Assembly (NCBI GenBank): GCA_965637545.1
Contig: OZ281497.1
Location: forward strand, 18,476,001-18,540,000
Length of the DNA: 64,000 bases
DNA from: Phallusia mammillata
Taxonomy: Eukaryota
Reading direction: 5' to 3'
The notes beneath the pieces are model-generated. The model did no database searches, had not been told where the DNA came from, and saw only the letters and a program-made list of their open reading frames with translations. Below are positions 8,226 to 32,700 of this stretch, piece by piece (position 1 is the stretch's first letter; each line of letters starts with the position of its first letter). The position numbers were made by a program, and so were the translations under genes.

Positions 8226-9096
8226 TCACCACGATTAGTCTGTGTAGTAAAATATGATCGGTTGTGTTTAAAACATTTTCGAAACTACATCAAAATATAA
8301 AAAAACACTGAACATATGACACTTTTTACAATCCATAAGCATCTTTTTTCCGAACCGGCTTATCGTTTGTTGTGTTTTCCTACAGTTGTTGTACCGCGGC
8401 TATTAATAACAATACCGTGCTTGACACTTCCTCCGCAGATCATCAATACCAAACTGTGACAAATGTTGATAGACGCCGCATGTAACCGCTGTGCATTTTT
8501 TTTAAATCCGAAAATTAAAACTAAAAGGCGCACGCTGCACATTGCATTCCAGTAAAACAGGGGATTTCCTGAGTGGTAGGTGGCGCAAGTAAGCTCGAAT
8601 TTCTGTTCGTGATTTTGTCATGGCAAACAGCCAGTTGCGGTATTTTAATCTACACGCCACTTATGCAACCAGTTTTAAAGGTCATTATGTTTGGTACTTG
8701 GTACTTTGTAGTTGCATTTCATGGTTTTAAATCGGAGTACAAAAAAGCAATCGTGAACTGACATTTCTGCCAACAATTGCTAACCTTCCATGCTTAGGCC
8801 TAACTGTGGGAAGACTATGTTTTGTGTCAAGGTCATTTTTTTTCGTTGAAAAAACGAAATCCTACCAAGCACCTATAAGTTTGTTCAGTTTGACATTATG
8901 CCAAAAAGTAATCGCATCCACTTGTGATATGCACGTGACAATTTGTGTCATGCTAGTGGCAATCTCGCCTCTGGGTAAGCTGATAAACTTGAATTTCTTC
9001 TACTATCAGTTGTAACTCGTAATTATATGATGGAGAGCTAGTTTGGTTCGATAGTAGTCGAGTCAAGTAATACGACAGAGAACAACATCGTCTAAA

Positions 9097-11707
9097 ATGA
9101 AGGCTTTTCTTTTAGGCATAATCTTATTTACCAGTGTAGCAGCAGGTAAGCACAGGTAAATCAAAATAAACATGTGTTTTTTAAACAGTATATGCCTATC
9201 CACAGGTTTGCGATGTTTTACCTGCGACAACGCCAGAAGCATGTTTATGTGTGCATTTCAAGGGAGAATTAGGACGTGCCACAATAACCAGGTCAGGCTG
9301 GTTTATCTAACTTAACCAATCATATGTAGGCTGGTTGTCTACTGTGACTTTATGCGTTTGTCGTTATTTACCAAAACGTTTCGTTACGAGATTTTGCATT
9401 TAAAGTATGTGTTTTATTTCGGTTTTAGGATTCATGTGAAACCGTTGTGCGTCGCGTTGGCAAACGATTGGTAATCATTAAGCGGTGTAAACAAAAACAG
9501 GCGTGTGTGGAAAATGCGAAACGACAAGTAAGTAAATTTAAAAAAATGTAAGTTGGTATTGCATGTTAAGTTGCATAAGATACATAAAACGCCTTTGTAA
9601 AAAGAAGCTAAACAAAAATAATGTCAATTTATGTCGTTTAACTTGGAAACTTCAGGCGTTAATTTCACGCAATCAAACAGTTTCGGTCGAAACATTTGTC
9701 CGGTTAAATCTACTTAAAAATGGGAATATGCCAGCTGCCCTTAGTTAGGTTTAAACCTGCAATTGATTGCAATTTACAGTTTGCCGTGTCGGAGTTTGGA
9801 TTTGTCGAGTGTAATACAGATCAAAGTAACGCTGTGTGTACTTGCTGCTGCCAAACCGAGCTTTGCAATTTGCAGCCTCATGCATGTACAGGAATGATAT
9901 GTGAGTAAATGACTTTCTCTAATATAGCGTACTTTCATTGCAATCATTTCTTACAGTTCCATGTCAAGAACGCAATGCAATTGAAAACGGTGCTGTGACT
10001 TGCTCAGCAAACAACCGCCCTCGTTCGGTTTGCAAGTTTGAATGTCGCAATCCAGGATTTTTTATTCGACCAGTGCGCAGTTCGGAGACGACGTGCAGAG
10101 CCACGGGAGAATGGGATAGGCCAAAACCATGCTGCGCAAGTAGGATGAGATTAACCTTTTAAAGTTGCGAATAACTTGCTTCGGGAATGCGGATCACAAA
10201 ATTCCGCGAGTATTTTATTGGAAACCCTATACTTTACCTTCTCAAAGACAGAAGAACCTTTCTATTGTCAAAAGCAAAGAATATGAAAACAATTCTTTTC
10301 AAAACGATTTTATGGAACCATTTTCTATAGCCTATTTTTACTTTTGTATAGTCGCAAGGGAAAGCAAGGTTATTTTGGTCTTACCTCTGATAGCTCGAGG
10401 CGACTCTGTCAATTTTTTTCAATAGATCCTGCCAAAGTCAACGTTACATGCGTTTTGGTAAAACATTCCAAATTTAGTTGTTATTCTTCACAAAAGTTTA
10501 CGGGTCCTACATTTTTGAACACGTCCATTCGAAAAAACTTATCTCAATATATTAAACATTTCGTTATTTTCAAGGAGCGTGCCCCCCGTACCTTCCAAAT
10601 GATATCGTATTTGTGCGCCAGGCTAGCACCTCGGAAGCGTGGGACGAATTCAAACGCAGGGTTGTCACCATAATGGGGTAAGTAAGTGCACGCATTAGCG
10701 CGGCTAAAATTTTGTTATGTAACAAACCACCCACGCGTTCCAAGGGAATTCAACGTGGGAAGTGAAAGTGCTTTGCCGGGAATTATATCTTACGGTGAGA
10801 ATGTTCATCAATCCACAGTAATTAGGTTTTCCGATTTTCCGGACGACAAGACTGTTTTCCTCCAGAAAGTCAATGGCCTAGAATTCACGCAAGGTAGATT
10901 ATACAGATTCCACAACGTGTATTTATACTACTGGAAACGCCACTAAAGCTTAAAAAGGCCCTTTTTATCCGCTATCACACGAAAACCGTTTGTTTTTCAC
11001 CCTCTCTTAGATAACAGTTCCAATGTGCGGACGGGAAATGTGCTCAAGTATCTCCTTGAGGATTACTTCACCACGGCAAACGGAGACAGGAATAGCGTGA
11101 GAAATGTAATTGTGCTTCAGGCTGACAACGCTTCGTCGGATGATGTAAGCGCTCCAGCCGATCGACTAAGAAAAGCTGGCCACAAGGTAAAGCTATGGTT
11201 TAAACGTCATGTATGCCTAATTGTTCTTCTGGTTATACAGCATAACTTTGTACACCGTTCAAAATACTTAGTCGAACGGGTTCCACAACACTATCTTCCC
11301 CCTGAAATCCATTGTTTTGTTGAGATAAGCTGATGCAAGGTACGGCCTGTGGAATGCTAGAAAGGAATGCTACAAACAGCTAAAAAATATTGGAATTATT
11401 CCATCGAAAATTGAAAGTTTACCAGCTCAGAAAATAAACAATCCTTCCTACTTTTGCGGTACAAGGCCAAATATAAAAAATACACTGTTAATACTTTTAC
11501 CACGGTCAGTCATACTTTCGTTTTTTGTAGATTTTTGTTATAGCCACAGCCAATTCATCCAATCCCGAGTATTACAACCAAGCAAGTGCCATGGTCGGTG
11601 ATCAGAAGCAACTTTATATTCAACAAAATCCATCTGACGCGACGTATATACAAGATCTCGTTCGCGAACTCTGTGATGATCCGTGTCAACCAGACAGTAA
11701 TCTGTAG
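9097..11707 (+). CDS. Secreted protein: signal peptide + Ly6/uPAR (three-finger) domain + one Sushi/CCP domain + C-terminal vWA domain, about 9 exons
   Basis: MKAFLLGIILFTSVAA|GLRCFTCDNA...CHNNQ|DSCETVVR...KRCKQKQAC...|...VCTCCCQTELCN (LU signature); PCQERNAIENGAVTC...CKFEC...TTCRATGEWDRPKPCC (CCP); NDIVFV...GIISYG...NVRTGNVLKYL...RNVIVLQAD...ADRLRKAG|IFVIA (vWA). Junction phases are consistent; stop TAG at 11705-11707. Confidence 0.85.
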
Positions 11708-22119: not shown

Positions 22120-25100
22120 TCATAAGCTTGGTCTGTGAAAGTGCGATTCGATATCATTGTCACCGCCTTCATGGGCATCCGGTTCCGATGGCATAAGAGA
22201 TGAACGGGTCAATCCCCAAAAGAGTTTCGGGGTCAGATCGTCTTTTGTTGCCTTGAACTTCCAGCCCATATGCTGATGGCACTCTGCACACTGACATATC
22301 GTCCACGCGTATCTGCAAGACGAGCTAACGTTAATCGTGAAGTCTAATCTATTAAGAAGTTAAAACAAAAGTTTGCCAAACCTAGGGGTACTGCGTTTGC
22401 CGCCAATGATGTTATGTCAAAAAACATGTCAAAGCGTATATGGTACAGCCATTACTTATTTCAAAATTTTTAAACAGATAGCATTTAGGAGTCTTTAAAG
22501 TTGAATTGCAACTACAAACCCGACCACAAGAACACAAATCGTCGGGAAGTCGTGGGGATCAAGGTGGTGCTCGGTAAATATTAACAATTAAATAAAGAAA
22601 CATATGGTACACGGCTTGTCATATCCACAATTCCCAAAACACTATCATAATGGTTGAAACGCATTGATATCACAACACAATAGCTTCGACAAACATTTCA
22701 TAAATGGGAGAAGAGGTCAGAATGGCATATTTTCCAAACGAAACAATCAACCCCAACCTAGAATAATATTGACAACCGCCGGTACGTGGGATTTTCTATC
22801 AAAATATCGCGTCATTGAAATAGTCACAGCATAGTTCGGTTTGTGATCTATGGTTTTCCGGTAAGAATAATAGTTCAAGCTTACCCTGGAAACCAGCTGT
22901 GCTCTGTTGTCGACCTTCCGACGTAGGTTAGTCCTTTAACTTTGTACAGGGTAAGCGTTTCATGCACCACGCCGCCGGGGTTGACGTAGGCCGCCATTGT
23001 GCCCGACTTGGACATGCTGAACACGTCTTTGCGATTCGCCACCAGTGCGGAACAACCGGAACACGTGATCGCCGTCCGCTGAGCATGAAATTAAATACAC
23101 ATTAGTTGGTGTCGCGTTGCAATTGTGCGACGTTTCGTGAATGAAGTAATTCAGTTCGCCAGCTGCTTGGGTACACAAGAACTGCCTTACCTTGATGCTT
23201 GCTGGGGTAATTAACTTACAAAACACGTTATATATGTTTCAATCTGGATTTGGAAAGTTCTTTGTTTTGCTGGATGTTAAATGTAGCCTTGAAAATCGAA
23301 TGCAATCATATCAGTGTGGCCGTTTTTTACGATATTTTACTGATCAGCTTGAGAATATCATATGCTCGCGTTAATGGCCAGTGCAAAAGGGTTTAGGGTA
23401 TAAGATGTGCAAAAGGGTTCAAAATGGTTTCAGGTATACGATAACTTGAAAATATTCGTTAAAATGTTTGTATTATTATTACTCTGCAAAAACCGAAGAA
23501 TTTTAAAATGAACCTAGATGAACCACATAAAGCGCCACCCCTTTGAGTGTCGAGATCAGTCTATATTACCAGGTGTTTACGTACAGTTGTCCCCACCTTA
23601 CGCAATATATTCAATATCATCCGAAGCCGCTGTACGGCGCTCTCGAGTCTCAACATTTCCAGTCTGGTTTGATCGCGAATCGGCAACATAGTTATGACCC
23701 AAAACGAGAACTCTGTCGCTTCGTTGGAGCATTGGCTTTCTTTCAGTTCCTGATTCCATTCACGTAGTTCCGTGAATATGGCCAGCTTCAAGAAGTTCTG
23801 TAAGTCAACAAATAGAAGAGATCTGAAAAAGCGATTATAAACAAGTAAGATATTTTGTTGTGACCACTTCCATATTCCCTTTTCGCCAAGCGAAATAACT
23901 TAATTAGGTTCAACTACTTAAAAACACGTTTGCCCACAGTTTGACAAAAAAATAATATACTTTATATTTAAAGTATGGCACAAAGTACAACAGATTTGCC
24001 AAACGGTATTTCAGTGTTGCCTTAAATATCATGGCGTCATTGAAAACGTCACTTTTCAAATACTTCCGAAGTAGGACTCGTTGGTACAATCCAAATCAGC
24101 GAAGGCTGGCAGAACACCATTTCTGCTCGACACCTTATGCAGGGCAAAGCAGCTAAGTTGAAAGTCTTTAGTATTAAATCAACAGAAGTCGAAAGCATGG
24201 GAGTTTGGACCTATATTAGAAAGATCATTTTGCTGGGGCCTTTGTACAAGTTCGGCAACTTCAAGGACCGTGTGCACTGGGTCATTATATTATTTTTTAA
24301 GATTCTTTTGCCGTTTTATTTGGTTCTTGTGTCAGAACAGAGCGAAGTGGAGTCGTACAGGCACCACACGAAAAACTATTACAAGGTTGGGTATAGTATA
24401 CAAAGTCAAAGTGCTGATACAAAACTGCCTAGCGGCAATCGCCCTGCCTTTACATATTGTTTTGCCAAACTTATTTAAACGGTTTTCTTAGAGATTTGCC
24501 GCATCTAGTGAGTGTAGCTATACAATGCAGCTGTAACTATAATTACACTTCGGTAAAACATAAAAAAATGAAACTGTGTTCAAATTTGGGTACTAAAGCC
24601 TGAAAAACAGTGTCTAAATAATATTCTTCAAAGTTTTGACATTGGAAACCTGTTGTTAGAAAATCCATTTAATTCATATTTTTAGGACGAAATGCAAGCG
24701 ACATGTCAATCATACTCCCACTGGGAAGACGACTTACAGTTTTTACCTGACAAGTGGATATCCACAACAGGAAATTTTACCGATGTGAGCCTAAACTCAA
24801 CGGACAACTACAATGAAACTATTTTCTATGAAAGCACAGGCAAAATTGTAAACGAAATATTAGCTTACAAACGAATAGCGTCCCAGATAAAGATGGAAAA
24901 CCAAAATATCACTAGAGAATGCTGCAGCGTCTACAGGTACAGTTGTTTATTGATCACGTAAATAATGTTTTTAAGGATAACTTTGTGATATGAAAATGGC
25001 CAAAACATTTTACAGAATACATTTTTATAATATTTATTTCTAGGATGAAATGTTTATTTCTTTAAAGCGCTAATACATACTAACAATAAAAGCGGATTAC

Positions 25101-28100
25101 TGTATGAATCACAGTACGCCATTGCTGTGATATGTACGAAAGAAAATGTCCAATTGATACGAACTACTTAATAGCGATTTGGTCGTATTGAAGTTGAAAT
25201 GTTTGGACCAAGGCAGCGCAACTTCGGCGTTTACATTCACGTGTACGATGTTCTTTCCACTGATGGCAAATCTGCTCGTTGCTATCTTAATGACTCCGCT
25301 TAAGGTAAGTTGTACATACACTTGGTAAGAGATCTAAGTCAAGAAGGGTGCTGGCTTGTGATCAAGTCGTTACAAACATGCGGACAGTTTTTGTCACTGT
25401 ATACCACAAATTGTACAATTGGCCCTCATGCTTGGAGGACCCTGTGCGAAAGCCCGACAAACTTAAGATACATTCTGAACAGTTATGTTTACATTTACAC
25501 TTTATGTTCACAGTCTAGCCGTTTTCTTCAACGCAAGCTACTCGTAGAAGGAAATCGACCAAGCGTCCAATTGACCGCCGAGGAAATGATACGACAAAGA
25601 CAGGTCAATAAAATTTTACATTTAGTAGTTCATTATGTCCCAGTGCTTAAACGTTTGTAAAGGCAATGGTATTAAAAAGTTTTAATACGTACACTTCTGC
25701 TGTAGAATGGCGTGCAGTATGTCGCGGACATTCTTGCCTTCTACCTCATTGTGTATAAAATTGTAATCATTTCTGGAGCACTCAAGATTTGCCTATCCAA
25801 CACCTACTGTTTGCCACGCTACAAGTCATTGCAAGTGGGTTTGCTTTAATTTTGTTTGGTGAGACATTTTAACTAGAATGTTCTACACTTATGCAGGTAC
25901 ATATTTTTTAGATATCGTTTCTTCTAATATCATCACAGGCACCCTGGCTCAGCATTCTTTGGAGTTTTATAGGCACCTGATTTGCTTGCATCGCAAAGTT
26001 AACAGAATGAATGTTTAATAATATGCCTTGTTTGTAGACATGTGTATGTCTGTTTAACTTATATTACGCCATGAAAAAGGAAGCAGAAAAAAGCAACATT
26101 TTTAAAAGATCAAACTGTATGTAGGTTTGCTTTGATTGACTACTTGAACATCAACTAAGCATTGCTTTTCAATGAACATAACTGTAGCAAAAATCCAATC
26201 AAATATATATGAAATAAACTTACCACATCATACATTCTGTGAACCCAGGCAGGCCATGCAGTGGACATGGATGTTCTTCGTAGTACTTTATTATGACGCT
26301 TGAATTTGTGATGTAAAATTAAACCTTCAGGTGTCCCTAAAGTACAATTGATGTTTTTTTCACAATACAATGTGTAACAAGGTTATAAGATTACAAATAT
26401 TATTATAGATGATACGTACAAGTTACACATTTTGCAATCACCAGTGTAAAAGTTTAGTAAAGTTTTCTTTTCAGAACAGTTACTTTTTTGCCGGTAATTT
26501 TTGGTAACATTTAAATATTGCTTTTTTATATTTAAATACAAAAATTTATACATAAAATTTTCAAACAATAAAAGAAAATGAAAATCAGAACCTCAATCAA
26601 AGTGAGATGAGTTACCTTACCATGGTTGCCAAAAACAAATCTACAGAAAAAAAGAGCTTTTATACCTCCAATCAGTTGTGCCTTACATCTGTGGCATGTT
26701 TCAATACTGTTTGTGACTTCGGGAAGAGTGACATCAGAAATTAGCTTGACCTTTGCCAGCACATTTCTGCAAATCAGAATCACATTTGAAACTTCTAAAC
26801 AAAAAGGCATGAATGGTAACATAAAAAAACACACCCATTTAACTGATTTCTTTTTTCCATAACTTGAAAACGATCTCGTCCCTCAACTACCAATCGCAGT
26901 GATTCAATTTGATATTCTTCTTCATCACGAAAGGAGCATATTTTTGCAGTGCAACCAAAATCATAGTATTTTTTCCTGTAGGCCATGTTTTCATCAACAA
27001 TATATCTACACAAAATAAGTATAATCAATTGTAACATTTTTTCCCCTTTTTTTAAGTGTAATTAATTGTAACATTTTGACATTAAGCCATTTTGACTAAC
27101 ATCACAATTATGTCACAAAGCAAAACATGTCATTGCAATGTTTCTCAATAGTCATGTTGTCTTATTTACTTGACAGTTAAAACCCCAAAGGTCTTATCTG
27201 ACTGCTGTAAGACTTGACGAATCATTGAAACTTCATTGAGTCGTGTGATTTGCAGTGGTAATGTTTGCCAAGGAATTAAAACAAAGTCTTGTATATAAAG
27301 GATTGGAAGTGTGACAAAACTGTCTTTTTCTAAGTAGGAAGTCCCAGTACATTCCTCCATATCCCCGAGATACTGTCAAAGTTGAACACATCTGTATTAG
27401 ATTAAATGTTTTTAATAAACCTAATATGGCATAATGTAATTACTCTATGACATGTTGGAAGATTTTGATCAAATGTGATAGATTCAGGCTTCGTTTGTTC
27501 CACATCATCGCTGCTGTCCAAATCTACACAGGCACATGAGTTCATTACTAAGCAACCAATAGAAAACATTAACAATCAATTACCTTCATTTTCTTCTCTC
27601 CCTCTTTCTAATCCAAACAAACTGCAAATATACAAATTGCGTAAACAACTCTTGTTGAGAAACAGCGTTTGATTTTGATTTTTTACAGTCTTTATTAATT
27701 TCCTTAAACACATATTAACACTCTAGCTCTCCCAAACACTAGTGCATTTACACTGATCGATTAAAAAAAGCATAGAAACATTTGGTCAAATTGTGTTTGC
27801 TAATTTAAATAAAAAACAACAGGTCAAAAACTATACACTGATAATATTTGCTCGACAGTGTATTATATTCAACACAATTTAATACACAAAAGTACAATAT
27901 TTACAATTTATATGACTATTTACAGTAACCTACAAGTTTCCAATTCTACGAAATCCTCTTCGAACTGGTCTGGGTAAATGGAAATGCACAGCATTATTTT
28001 CAACAGGCTCCTGCAATTGTGCCAGGTCTTCAGGATCAGAACCTTCATTATCAGAACTTTCATTTTCTTCTATTTCTATTTCACCATCAGCATTTATATC

Positions 28101-28231
28101 TGCATAAATTTCAAAACAAAGTATGCATAAATGTTATGGACCTTATGGTTAAGCTAAAGTAATAAATCAGCATTTTTGTTACCATCTTCTTCAATTGGCA
28201 TTGCATCCTCTTCCTGATGTTCATTGTCCAT
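22120..28231 (-). CDS. CRBN: Cereblon (Lon N-like domain + CULT thalidomide-binding domain)
   Basis: [10 protein letters not shown]|[17 protein letters not shown]...[51 protein letters not shown]|[28 protein letters not shown]. Tri-Trp pocket and both CxxC pairs present. ATG at 28231, stop at 22120-22122. Confidence 0.95.
24197..26018 (+). CDS. Nested antisense gene in CRBN intron 23798-26223: multi-pass membrane protein resembling a diverged, truncated mucolipin (TRPML S1-luminal loop-S2-S3-S4). Exons 24197-24385, 24686-24936, 25175-25304, 25514-25603, 25706-25834/25838, 25912-(25980 or 26018)
   Basis: Six exons with consistent GT-AG phases; hydrophobic segments; luminal loop with NFT/NST/NET/NIT sequons. 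Motif-level similarity to TRPML is given in the findings. The last exon's frame is ambiguous. Confidence 0.7.
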
Positions 28232-29709
28232 TATGATTTTTTGATTTCAAATGCTTGGAACAAGTTTAATAAAAGTCCGGTAAAGACAGTATTTTACATT
28301 AGAACAATAATTTTACACTTATGTTTCCACAAACAATAGTTTAACTACATTTAAAATTCATTTTGTAAGAAATTTATGTTTTCTGTAAAAGGACAAGACA
28401 AAAAAATATTCAAAAAAACGACAGAAATATCTCAACATTATTTGTAAACAATCTGCAGAACCTGAAAATAAAATGGACGGGGAGTTTTTTTTTTCTCATC
28501 CTTGAGTATTCCAATTACAAACAGAAATATCTTACGTTTGGAGAGTTATTCCCAATTGAATAACCTTATTAAACCAAGCAATAACATGTCATAAATCTAA
28601 CATATATTTGCAAAAAAGTCTCGTTTTTCACTTTTGCAATTTTACACTAATGGGGTATTCCCCTAAATAACGAATTCATGACATGTTTTTTTTCAAGCTT
28701 TTTACGTCCACTTTTTCCCAAATGTTACTGCATTGAATGTAATTGATTTTGAGGAATTGGGGGATTATTTAAACTCCAATTGTTCTTTTTTGGGAGGATT
28801 TTTATCTTTTAGTGAATTATAGGCACTTTTTCCAGTGGAAATAAGGAAATAACCAGAACGTTTATACCTCTTAAAATAATACCAATGTGTTTTATCACAG
28901 ATAATTTGCTGTCTAACCGGTATGATAATATATCTATGGTTTTATGTTACTTGAACCACTTCCTTCGTAATTACGAGGAGATTGACATAAGACTGAAACG
29001 ATAACGGCATTCAAGAACAAAATGCACCAAGGAATTGCAGTCCGACAGCAATGACTTTGGCAGTCGACACTTTGCAGCATAGCTACGCAACTTTTAAAAA
29101 TATTGACATAACAAAATAGTTTGATACAAAAATAAAAGGTGCCCGAATTATGACCACTCAGTGACAATTATTCTAACCCGCGCCGAGTTTAATCAGTAAC
29201 GATCGCGGATTCATCCCAGCGGTACCATTCACCGTCGAGTTGTTCATACATTGCGCGCTGGCTGTAACCCTATAAACGGTCTGAGCACGGCCATGACGTA
29301 ATGGCAGTTCGACAAAGCGTTAGATTCGAGGAGTCGCAGTGAAGAATTTTTAGCAACGTCGTGATTGCAATTTGAAACGGGCATCGCGTTACTTCCTGCC
29401 CAATCCCAAAACAACAGAGTTTGCGAATGCGCTCACCGATCTGGCGATCTAGTCATTTCGCGTGACGTCCTATTTAGCCCGGACTGGGCTATGAATGAAA
29501 GTTGTTACATGACTGCTTATTTGCACTGCGATAATAGGCAGCTTGTATAATCATGTGAGGTCTGTGTAAATTAGATATCTTAAGGGAATACGGAAAATAT
29601 GAGTATTGATAGCCTTTCCTGTATAAACACGTCTTTGATCATACTGATATGCGAAGCAAGCGCAACTTCTGTAAAAGGTTGTGAAAGTTTGGAGTAAACT
29701 AAAAGGAAA

Positions 29710-32700
29710 ATGGACACGAATGAGGGCACAAGATCAGTAGGCAAACTTGATAACTTAGACGAAAAAGAAGCGAGCAGCAGAAATGTTGCTCAAAGTAGCC
29801 CGACGACCCCACCGAAAACTCCAAAACGGAGGGGCAGCAAAACTCTTCGAAACCTCGCGCGAAGGGGCAGTTCAATGTCAATACTGAAACTCCGTTCACC
29901 AACTCATTCAAATTTACCCGAAAACCCTGTTATAGAAGGTATGCCTTGCATGTACTGTTGAAATGTTTGTTATTTCGGTTGAAAAACAACCTGTTTATAT
30001 TTTGTTTGCAAGCAGATTTTTTTCACCAGCTTGATCGAAACCGGAACTTTTGAACTTTTGCGCTATAGGGCATCATGTGCCACCATAATGCAGTTTGTTC
30101 ACAGATATTTTCAGACCGCTTTCATTTATCGCCTAAATAACCTTGCTTTCAACATCTTGTAAGTTTTGGTAGCTATAACTAACATTTTTGTCATTGCAGA
30201 AAGTGTAGATGAAGTGGATGGAATTTTGAAGAAGAATAAGCCAGAAAAGTTAAAAAAGAACAAGGTAAATGTGTCTGTGTCGGATTTGTCCTGCAACAAT
30301 TGCTAAACACTTAGTATTTTAGAATTCACAAAAGCCCGTATCCGGCGAGGAACCGCCATTAACAACACCAACTAAAAGGCCCAAGTTTCTGAGAGCATTT
30401 AGCAGTCCGAATCTAAAAAAGGATCATCAGGGTCAAAGCATCGATTTCTCACCCATAGACACGGTTCAAGAGGATGCTGCTGAAAATGAAATTATATTTG
30501 AACCCAAACTTCCATCTCCAGATGTTCAGGATTTTAACTATGAAGGTATTTATACTTTTTGTTTTGTTGTTTATCAAGTTTTGGTAGTGTATAGCAGTGG
30601 TCGGCAACCGCCTGTCCGCGAGAAGTTCGTTACCACGTCTTTTCAAGGTTGTCCGCGATAATTTTCCGGTTTCGAAAACGGTTCGCAGTGCCAAAAAGGT
30701 TGCCGACCCCTGGTATATAGCATTCGTGTTTCATTAGGTATGATTGTGTTTTTACACAGTCGGTTTAAACCCTGCAAAGCCATAAAAGCACTTGAACTTG
30801 GTTGCCCGGTACAGGAACAGACTCGTGACCACATTGTCGATGAGTGCATGCAGAGCGAAGCGAGTCTGATTGCCGAAATTATTCCTGGTTTATTTGCAAT
30901 GCTTTAATAGAAGTATTCTATTAATAGAAGACGACCTTGATAGTTAATCCAGCTTTTCGTTAATGGTGTTTAGCAAATGAAAAAGTGTTCTTCGGAAAAC
31001 CATTATACCTGTACTGATATGAAAAGGAAAACGTTTATTTACAGAGGTGCTGGCGGAAACCCATAAGGTCGAGGCAGAAAAGGAGTACGCTGGAACAGAA
31101 AAGACCCAGCCTTTTACTTCGGAATATGGAAAGGCAGATATAGACTCGGTCGAATATGGCCATGATATGATTATTCAAGAAATTGAAACTGGTTTTTTTC
31201 TTGGACCTGTTTTAAGGTTGGTTATTGCAAATTGGATTTGCCCCGGTATCATACCCTCCACATACAAAACAAGAAACAGATAAATACATTTTGTTTTAAA
31301 AGTTATTCAAACATACCCCCACTTTTTTGTTGTTAAACAAACAGTCTAACATAAGATACTAGATTTCAGGTGTACAGACTAAAACCATAAACTTTTCAAT
31401 TGAAATCACTACTTTTTTGGTGAAAAGTGAAATCTTTTTAGCGCCGTTAGCGGAAATTTTGTCAACGCCGCTGCGTTCATCGACACTGGACTGTCGACAC
31501 TTGTTTCTTTTTTTCTCCCTGAGAGCTGAGATAAGGCCGGGAGCGTCAGATCCTTCGTTTGTTTATTTTGGTTTGGTGTTTAGTTTTACTTATTGTTCGG
31601 TACGGTTGCCCATTGAGGACTTAGGGAAAAAAAGTTGTCTAAAATTATTAAATTACAATGTTATTGGGAGGAGACATTTTTGCTTTCGTATTTTCCCAGT
31701 TTATTTACCTCGACAGTCGACACCAAATGTAATTAATGGACCGGGTTATTTTTGGCTAGATTAGTTTTTCACACTTACAGCCGCCAGCAAGGCTTACTTT
31801 ACTTTGAAGAGTATTAAAAAAATCTTTTTCAGTAGTATGCATGTCTGAATTGTGAAACAACCAGTAGCTGAATGCCTATAAATAGCTGAGTACCCCAAAG
31901 CCCTCTAAAGTTACAAAGACTATAACCGCGTTCTGCTTATTAATGTTAATTAGGTAAAACTGGCCTAAATCATGTCAGGTTTCAAAAAGGGGTGGTTGAA
32001 CAACCAGTTCTAGTTAGAATTATTACAAGAAATTTTACAATGGAGTATGCTGATCAAGAAAAGTCTCCAGAACCTGTTCAAGAACAGGAAACTAAAACTG
32101 ACCGTGAACATGAACGTATCCTAAATGAAATAGAAACTACAGATACAGCATTCATAGGTGCTTCTCTGAGGTAATTGAAAGACAAATCCAGCTTAAAGAT
32201 TTAAACTTGAAGATTGTAAAGTTTTGGCTTTTCCAGTAGAGGAACAAAACTAAGACAAACACTAGCTGTAAAAACATTGTAAAACATCAAGTTCCATGCT
32301 AGGGTTTATTAGTTTTACCAGTAACAAATCTAATGTGTAAAATAACAGCACTAATACTACTTCATTAGAGCATTCTGAGCTTTCACTATCACTTTCATTG
32401 GAAATGTTCGAAGTAGATTCACTGTTGCATCAAACTAAAAATACTTATTACACTTATCAGTCAACTGATTAAATAAGAGATACCATGATTATATTGCTGC
32501 GGATATTTGGCCTGTCAGACAATTACCGCAAGGTTGATTCACAAATTTAAATTTTATTTGTATAAGTCTATATATTGACCACATGAAAGACAAGTAGTAG
32601 GAAAGATTGATATGATTGTAGGAAAAATCTGGTCGAATAGTGCTAGTGTTTAAGCATCAAATTATAGCTGAACTTTTCTTTATGTTTAAAGGGCGGTTTA

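What the first reader, a model, noticed from the sequence alone, without database searches (positions are those of the whole stretch)
24197..26018. Pore-less mucolipin (TRPML)-like gene nested antisense inside a cereblon intron
A six-exon + strand gene sits wholly within the 2.4-kb CRBN intron. By-eye alignment to TRPML3 as recalled: [40 protein letters not shown] vs [45 protein letters not shown] (pre-S1/S1); NITREC vs DISIREC; LKLKCL...FTFTCTMF vs FKLKAI...FTLTITF (luminal strands); [10 protein letters not shown] vs NGWYIMIIISDIL (S3); [11 protein letters not shown]...YRHL vs DVCSILLGT...IRYL (S4, using the phase-1 donor at 25839). The luminal loop is about half the normal length and carries four sequons. 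The frame ends right after S4, with no S5, no selectivity filter (NGDD) and no S6 before the next CRBN exon. That would be a sensor-domain-only TRPML derivative: a possible dominant-negative or auxiliary subunit, or a channel scaffold repurposed for another job. A further exon at 26038 and one at about 26409 (YDTYK, like TRPML YETIK) would interleave the two genes, but this is speculative.
Basis: partly seen in the sequence, partly recalled or inferred. Interest (0 to 1): 0.78.

Follow-up and report, generated by a model that had tools for sequence, protein, structure and literature searches.

The report
Orphan four-pass membrane gene inside cereblon intron

Summary
The gene is real. RNA contigs confirm the 2,426-nt cereblon (CRBN, - strand) intron 23798-26223. 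One + strand contig inside it joins 25603|25706 and 25834|25912 with GT..AG ends.

The six exons give an open 285-aa frame (305 aa from ATG 24137). Exons 1-3 have no RNA cover, but they show strong third-position GC enrichment that the introns lack.

Exon 6 therefore reads [22 protein letters not shown] and stops at 25978-25980.

The product is N-in/C-in with four helices. Loop 1 is about 118 aa and holds all four sequons. No S5, pore or S6 exon lies downstream.

TRPML kinship has no support. The six exon peptides give no Pfam or solved-structure match to TRPML or PKD at E<=10. Exon 2 has no relative among 1.84 billion representatives. One other animal's orthologous CRBN intron is empty.

The decisive whole-protein profile or fold test could not be run, because the spliced protein has no reference.

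Verdict: an expressed, orphan, nested membrane-protein gene. The scan's notes show no earlier finding of it on other DNA.

The parts
24197..24385 (+). Exon 1 (63 codons). It holds a basic N-terminus and helix 1 (about residues 27-47). The frame is open from 24044 and there is an earlier in-frame ATG at 24137.
   Evidence: Donor AAG|GTTGGG. GC by codon position 0.37/0.24/0.62. No RNA contig covers it.
24686..24936 (+). Exon 2 (251 nt). It encodes most of the roughly 118-aa first loop, with all four N-x-S/T sequons and Cys70/142/143.
   Evidence: Acceptor tttttag|, donor CAG|GTACAG. No Pfam, PDB, word-search or HMMER relatives. No RNA contig covers it.
25175..25304 (+). Exon 3 (130 nt). It holds the end of loop 1 and helix 2 (about residues 166-188).
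   Evidence: An in-frame TAG lies directly before the acceptor, which forces the exon start. The donor AAG|GTAAGT is the consensus. GC3 is 0.57.
25514..25603 (+). Exon 4 (30 codons). It encodes the basic cytosolic linker between helices 2 and 3.
   Evidence: The X1 RNA contig starts at 25516 and joins 25603|25706 with GT..AG.
25706..25834 (+). Exon 5 (43 codons). It holds helix 3 (about residues 223-247) and a short loop with two Cys.
   Evidence: Both junctions are seen in the X1 RNA contig. The donor GT is at 25835, not 25839.
25912..25980 (+). Coding part of exon 6. It encodes helix 4 (22 aa) followed directly by the TGA stop at 25978-25980. The transcript runs on to at least 26008.
   Evidence: joint 25834|25912, contig to 26008. 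(translation).
23798..26223 (-). The host intron of cereblon (2,426 nt), which contains the whole nested gene.
   Evidence: CT..AC joint 23797|26224 in runs X1, X5 and X6. The CRBN reading frame was rebuilt across it.
23597..23797 (-). CRBN exon just 3' of the host intron in CRBN orientation.
26224..26335 (-). CRBN exon just 5' of the host intron in CRBN orientation.

Best explanation
This is an independently transcribed and spliced protein-coding gene on the strand opposite cereblon, lying wholly within one cereblon intron.

It encodes a protein of 285 aa, or 305 aa from the upstream ATG. The inferred layout is:
- a short basic cytosolic N-terminus;
- helix 1, acting as a signal anchor;
- a lumenal or extracellular loop of about 118 aa with four N-glycosylation sequons and four Cys;
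- helix 2;
- a 34-aa basic cytosolic linker;
- helix 3;
- a 15-aa loop with two Cys;
- helix 4, which ends the protein.

Shown: nesting, strand, three splice junctions, the open frame and expression in one RNA run.

Inferred: exons 1-3 belong to the same mRNA; the topology; glycosylation.

The protein has no pore-forming part, so on its own it cannot be a TRP-type channel. The most likely role is a lineage-restricted, non-conducting tetraspan glycoprotein of the secretory or endolysosomal membrane system, for example an accessory or organising subunit. Its evolutionary family is unresolved.
For: -: + strand GT..AG joints 25603|25706 and 25834|25912 in an RNA contig. CRBN joint 23797|26224 in three runs.
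- six exons with canonical sites give an 858-nt open frame.
-, plus the exon 6 translation: four hydrophobic segments.
- all four sequons lie in loop 1.
- K/R count read from the sequence: 5 in the N-terminus and 7 in the helix 2-3 linker, against 3 in the short loop. This fits an N-in topology.
- GC by codon position is 0.37/0.32/0.54 in exons 1-3, with no periodicity in non-exon sequence. Only 1 of 10,000 shuffles reached this.
- GC is raised over the exons.
- no pore-like or paired hydrophobic + strand ORFs from 25981 to 29600.
Against: - Only exons 4-6 are seen in RNA, in one low-depth contig of one of four runs.
- No orthologue was found. Exon 2 has no relatives. The orthologous CRBN intron of locus L001 is only about 1 kb and holds no match.
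- A codon-usage score trained on CRBN did not favour the model frame in the membrane exons.
- There is no family assignment, so the functional statement is inference from topology alone.
Confidence: 0.7

Rival explanations
1. It is a pore-less derivative of a TRPML (mucolipin) channel. It would keep only pre-S1, S1, a shortened luminal domain and S2-S4, and would act as a voltage-sensor-like-domain-only subunit, either dominant-negative or auxiliary.
For: - The topology and spacing resemble a group-2 TRP S1-S4 module: a large glycosylated S1-S2 loop, a helix 2-3 linker of about 34 aa and a short helix 3-4 loop.
These are recollections, not tests.
Against: - No PKD_channel or mucolipin-domain hit for any exon peptide at E<=10.
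- No TRPML or PKD2 chain among PDB matches at E<=10 for all six pieces.
- Exon 2 has no TRPML hit among 1.84 billion representatives.
- The language-model atlas gave nothing.
- The loop is about 118 aa, against about 198 aa (residues 87-284) for the mouse TRPML2 luminal domain (PMC8808176).
- Helix 4 has no Arg, while TRPMLs keep one at the end of S4 (PMC8808176).
Confidence: 0.15
2. It is a non-coding antisense intronic transcript or a decaying gene remnant. On this reading the long spliced open frame is fortuitous or no longer under selection.
For: - Expression is low and patchy: one contig in one of four RNA runs.
- No relatives were detected.
- It is absent from the orthologous intron of L001.
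- The protein ends abruptly at the end of helix 4.
- The codon-usage test was inconclusive.
Against: - An 858-nt frame stays open across six exons in AT-rich DNA.
- Third-position GC periodicity is present in exons 1-3 and absent in the introns.
- There are four well-spaced hydrophobic helices. The sequons lie only in the predicted lumenal loop and the basic residues on the predicted cytosolic side.
Confidence: 0.12
3. It is a divergent member of another four-pass family with a large first extracellular loop, of the claudin/PMP22/LHFPL/clarin/calcium-channel-gamma type.
For: Four helices, a large glycosylated first loop with cysteines, and small size.
Against: - No Pfam hit to any such family on the pieces.
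- The 34-aa basic helix 2-3 linker and the lack of any C-terminal tail are, from general knowledge, atypical for that group.
- Helix 1 starts about 26 residues in, rather than at the N-terminus.
Confidence: 0.08

Closest known systems
[quoted passage not shown]
   Same: Four helices with a large N-glycosylated, cysteine-containing loop between the first two. A cytosolic linker of about 30 aa between helices 2 and 3. A short loop between helices 3 and 4.
   Different: - It has no S4-S5 linker, S5, pore helices, NGD filter or S6.
- The loop is about 118 aa rather than about 200 aa.
- The fourth helix has no Arg.
- No profile or sequence match was obtained for any exon peptide, so membership is not shown.
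Sensor-domain-only membrane proteins (Hv1/HVCN1, TMEM266), from general knowledge
   Same: Four-helix proteins that lack a separate pore domain.
   Different: Those proteins have short S1-S2 loops and an arginine-bearing S4. This protein has neither, and no similarity to them was tested or found.
Antisense genes nested in introns of the same sea-squirt genome (for example the GPR22-family receptor in a COG5 intron, note s1-355923)
   Same: A complete gene on the opposite strand inside one intron of a housekeeping-type host gene.
   Different: That case was reported as conserved across tunicates and assigned to a family. Here no orthologue and no family were found.
Pig Mcoln3 truncated pseudogene (PMC7312350)
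   Same: A precedent for a TRPML locus that has lost its pore-coding part.
   Different: That one is described as a pseudogene lacking five of six helices. This one is spliced, open and expressed, has four helices, and has no shown link to TRPML.

Membership tests
TRPML (mucolipin) channels | S5-S6 pore domain with two pore helices and the conserved NGD selectivity filter (PMC8808176) | tested here: not met
   The frame stops at 25978-25980, straight after helix 4, and the RNA contig reads through the stop. The + strand ORFs from 25981 to 29600 show no pore-like or paired hydrophobic segments. The ten scanned with Pfam gave no PKD_channel hit.
TRPML (mucolipin) channels | Profile match to PKD_channel or the mucolipin luminal domain | tested here: inconclusive
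   The six exon peptides were scanned singly at E<=10 and gave no such family. The whole spliced protein could not be submitted because it has no reference. Short pieces are weak probes.
TRPML (mucolipin) channels | Luminal 'polycystin-mucolipin' domain of about 200 aa between S1 and S2, with five helices, a seven-stranded sheet and two disulfides (PMC8808176) | tested here: inconclusive
   The loop is about 118 aa with four Cys. AlphaFold2 on exon 2 alone gave pLDDT 46, which is unusable. Exon 2 has no TRPML hit in the PDB or among 1.84 billion representatives.
TRPML (mucolipin) channels | Conserved Arg at the cytosolic end of S4, paired with Tyr at the start of S3, for PI(3,5)P2 coupling (PMC8808176) | tested here: not met
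In the RNA-supported frame helix 4 has no basic residue at all. A Tyr does follow the NG at the start of helix 3.
TRPML (mucolipin) channels | Detectable sequence similarity to solved TRPML1-3 or PKD2 chains | tested here: not met
   phmmer of all six exon peptides against the PDB at E<=10 returned no TRPML or polycystin chain.
Antisense nested intronic gene | Both ends of the gene lie inside one intron of a host gene, on the opposite strand, with its own splicing | tested here: met
   Host intron 23798-26223 is defined by CT..AC joints. The nested transcript has GT..AG joints on the + strand, and its coding range 24197-25980 lies inside the intron.

The most novel reading that the evidence does not exclude
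The gene is a true TRPML descendant that kept only the S1-S4 sensor-like module with a halved luminal cap. It would be a free-standing, pore-less 'sensor-only' group-2 TRP protein that joins or regulates the sea squirt's full-length TRPML or polycystin channels.
Probability: 0.13. Interest if true: 0.7.

Novelty: new member of a known kind. Interest (0 to 1): 0.27.

Why it matters
As it stands, this adds an expressed membrane-protein gene, with no counterpart in the protein collections searched, to a sea-squirt genome. It is one more example of antisense nesting in a compact genome, and its transcription could interfere with cereblon's.

It would matter more if the whole-protein profile or fold test showed TRPML ancestry. 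A natural sensor-domain-only group-2 TRP protein would be a new tool for asking what the S1-S4 module and luminal cap do without a pore. No test run here points that way.

Tried and rejected
- **Pfam on each exon peptide at E<=10:** only a sub-threshold CHASE4 hit on exon 2.
- **PDB phmmer on all six pieces at E<=10:** only weak chance matches (TipC2, a capsid protein, GABA transporter).
- **Word-index search with exon 2:** no candidates. It can only see proteins of 46-145 aa.
- **Full HMMER search of exon 2 against 1.84 billion representatives:** two hits. Both are bacterial tandem-repeat proteins scored over 8-9 stretches, and I rejected them as spurious.
- **Language-model atlas on exons 1, 3 and 5:** nothing usable.
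- **AlphaFold2 on exon 2 alone:** pLDDT 46, so no fold search was run.
- **Codon-usage log-odds trained on CRBN:** inconclusive. The training set is small and soluble-protein biased.
- **Metagenome scan with exon 1:** two contigs at 50% GC matched only the helix-1 pattern. I rejected them as chance.
- **Orthologous loci:** the word search with the CRBN exon next to the intron found nothing. The CULT-domain exon gave two fragments.
  - L001 holds the orthologous intron, which has no nested gene.
  - L002 is a close relative's contig of only 916 nt, too short to reach the intron.
the + strand frames there are short, not hydrophobic as a pair, and without family hits.
- **Left out:** Pfam, HHpred or AlphaFold on the whole spliced protein.
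Full report
**What is in the sequence**

The minus strand of 22123-29400 encodes cereblon. Spliced RNA contigs from four public runs of the same organism define these exons:
- 22885-23078
- 23597-23797
- 26224-26335
- 26665-26766
- 26835-27005
- 27170-27372
- 27444-27523
- 27584-27621
- 27934-28099
- 28183 onward

Joining these exons gives a continuous CRBN reading frame from MDNEHQ to the CULT domain. The intron between 23797 and 26224 is 2,426 nt. It is supported by CT..AC joints in three runs.

**The nested gene**

On the + strand inside this intron, six segments with canonical splice sites join into one open frame:

| Exon | Coordinates |
|---|---|
| 1 | 24197-24385 |
| 2 | 24686-24936 |
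| 3 | 25175-25304 |
| 4 | 25514-25603 |
| 5 | 25706-25834 |
| 6 (coding part) | 25912-25980 |

One RNA contig of run X1 (314 nt, depth about 4) starts at 25516. It joins 25603|25706 and 25834|25912 with GT..AG ends on the + strand, then continues to 26008. The last three exons are therefore transcribed and spliced in the sense of the nested gene, independently of CRBN.

The contig also settles the last donor. With the real donor:
- Exon 6 is read in another frame. It encodes 22 mostly hydrophobic residues and stops at TGA 25978-25980.
- The transcript reads through that stop for at least 28 more bases.
- The product is 285 aa.
- It would be 305 aa if the in-frame ATG at 24137 is used. The frame is open from 24044.

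**Are exons 1-3 real?**

No RNA contig covers exons 1-3 in the four runs, so I looked for internal evidence.
- The exon 3 acceptor is forced, because an in-frame TAG lies immediately before it.
- The exon 3 donor is the consensus AAG|GTAAGT.
- GC content by codon position in exons 1-3 is 0.37/0.32/0.54 in the model frame. The introns and flanks give 0.35/0.32/0.33.
- Only 1 of 10,000 nucleotide shuffles reached the observed third-position excess. The statistic was chosen after seeing the data, and open frames are slightly biased, but the effect is large.
- GC is also raised over each exon.
- A codon-usage score trained on CRBN favoured the model frame only for the two hydrophilic exons. I count it as inconclusive.

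**The product**

Hydropathy gives helices at about residues 27-47, 166-188 and 223-247. The RNA-supported C-terminal helix is at 264-285.

Other features, read from the sequence:
- All four N-x-S/T sequons (N93, N100, N106, N137) and four cysteines lie in the loop of about 118 aa between helices 1 and 2.
- The N-terminus has five K/R residues.
- The 34-aa helix 2-3 linker has seven K/R residues.
- The short helix 3-4 loop has three K/R residues and two cysteines.

This fits a four-pass glycoprotein with both ends in the cytosol. It has no C-terminal tail.

**Is there a pore?**

No. Between 25981 and the 5' end of CRBN (about 29600), the + strand has no pair of strongly hydrophobic open segments. 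The ten + strand open segments there that I scanned with Pfam gave no PKD_channel hit.

**Is it TRPML-like?**

Every objective test I could run was negative.
- The six exon peptides, scanned singly against Pfam at E<=10, gave no PKD_channel or mucolipin-domain hit.
- phmmer of each of the six against all PDB sequences at E<=10 returned no TRPML or polycystin chain.
- Exon 2, which is most of the loop, found nothing in the word-index search.
- In the full HMMER search of 1.84 billion representatives, exon 2 found only two bacterial tandem-repeat proteins, scored over 8-9 stretches. They are spurious.
- The language-model atlas gave nothing for exons 1, 3 and 5.

Against the family's defining features as given in PMC8808176:
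- The pore domain and the NGD filter are absent.
- The loop is about 118 aa, against about 198 aa for the luminal domain.
- The conserved Arg at the cytosolic end of S4 is absent, because helix 4 has no basic residue.

What remains in favour is the general S1-S4-like spacing and a few short motif resemblances to TRPML sequences as recalled from memory. These are leads, not tests.

Exon-sized pieces of 22-83 aa are weak probes for remote homology. The whole spliced protein has no reference, so I could not submit it to Pfam, profile-profile or structure tools. Folding exon 2 alone gave pLDDT 46, which is unusable. Distant TRPML ancestry is therefore unproven, not excluded. I put it at about 0.13-0.15.

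**Comparative evidence**

A search with the CRBN CULT-domain exon retrieved two fragments, and each led to one locus.

*L001* comes from a 483-kb contig of an ENA assembly of an unidentified animal.
- Its CRBN is about 45-60% identical to this one. The gene is compact, so I do not take the contig for human.
- It keeps the same intron position. Residues up to 307 end at 8348 and residue 308 starts at 9335.
- That intron is only about 1 kb.
- tBLASTn with the nested product at E<=50 found no match in that intron. The two weak chance matches elsewhere in the 20-kb locus are unrelated.

*L002* is a close relative, 86% identical in that exon. The contig is only 916 nt and does not reach the intron.

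The exon 2 search found no self hit. So neither this gene nor an annotated orthologue with a conserved loop is in that protein collection. The gene looks lineage-restricted or fast-evolving, but sampling is thin.

**Mechanism and verdict**

The best-supported reading (about 0.7) is an independently transcribed, spliced, protein-coding gene nested antisense in a cereblon intron. It makes a small four-pass membrane glycoprotein that cannot conduct ions as a TRP channel does, because it has no pore domain. Its family is unresolved. A role as a non-conducting accessory or organising tetraspan is inferred from topology only.

Rivals:
- a TRPML-derived sensor-only protein (about 0.15);
- a non-coding antisense transcript or decaying remnant with a fortuitous frame (about 0.12);
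- a divergent member of another tetraspan family (about 0.08).

These rivals partly overlap with the best reading, which leaves the family open.

Nested antisense genes are common in this genome according to earlier notes of the scan (for example s1-355923), so nesting itself is ordinary.

Noticed in passing
window 26281, 26721, 26728, 26730: All four RNA runs differ from the assembly at the same four positions in two CRBN exons (T>C, G>A, G>T, G>C). This looks like strain or allele differences between the sequenced individual and the RNA samples. Two allelic contigs also occur at 26900-26933 in X1.
   Followed up: no
That ATG lies in ATGCAG|G, which also looks like a splice or trans-splice acceptor. 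The true start of the nested gene is therefore undecided.
   Followed up: partly
window 24197-25980 versus CRBN exons 22885-28356: The two overlapping-locus genes differ in third-position GC: 0.52 for the nested gene and 0.39 for CRBN. The reason is unknown.
   Followed up: no
window 26213: The only canonical AATAAA downstream of the nested stop lies 10 nt from the CRBN exon at 26224-26335 on the other strand. A long 3' UTR of the nested gene would therefore abut, or overlap in antisense, a CRBN exon. An AATAAT variant lies at 26017.
   Followed up: no
L001 5073-6281 and 16317-17972: In the other animal's CRBN locus, a reverse-transcriptase fragment (weak RVT_1) sits inside a different CRBN intron on the opposite strand. 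A 551-aa DDE_1 transposase gene lies downstream.
   Followed up: no
window 29698-30658 (+): A + strand gene begins a few hundred bases from the CRBN 5' end, with a Ser/Pro/Lys-rich first exon. This suggests a divergent promoter region shared with CRBN.
   Followed up: no
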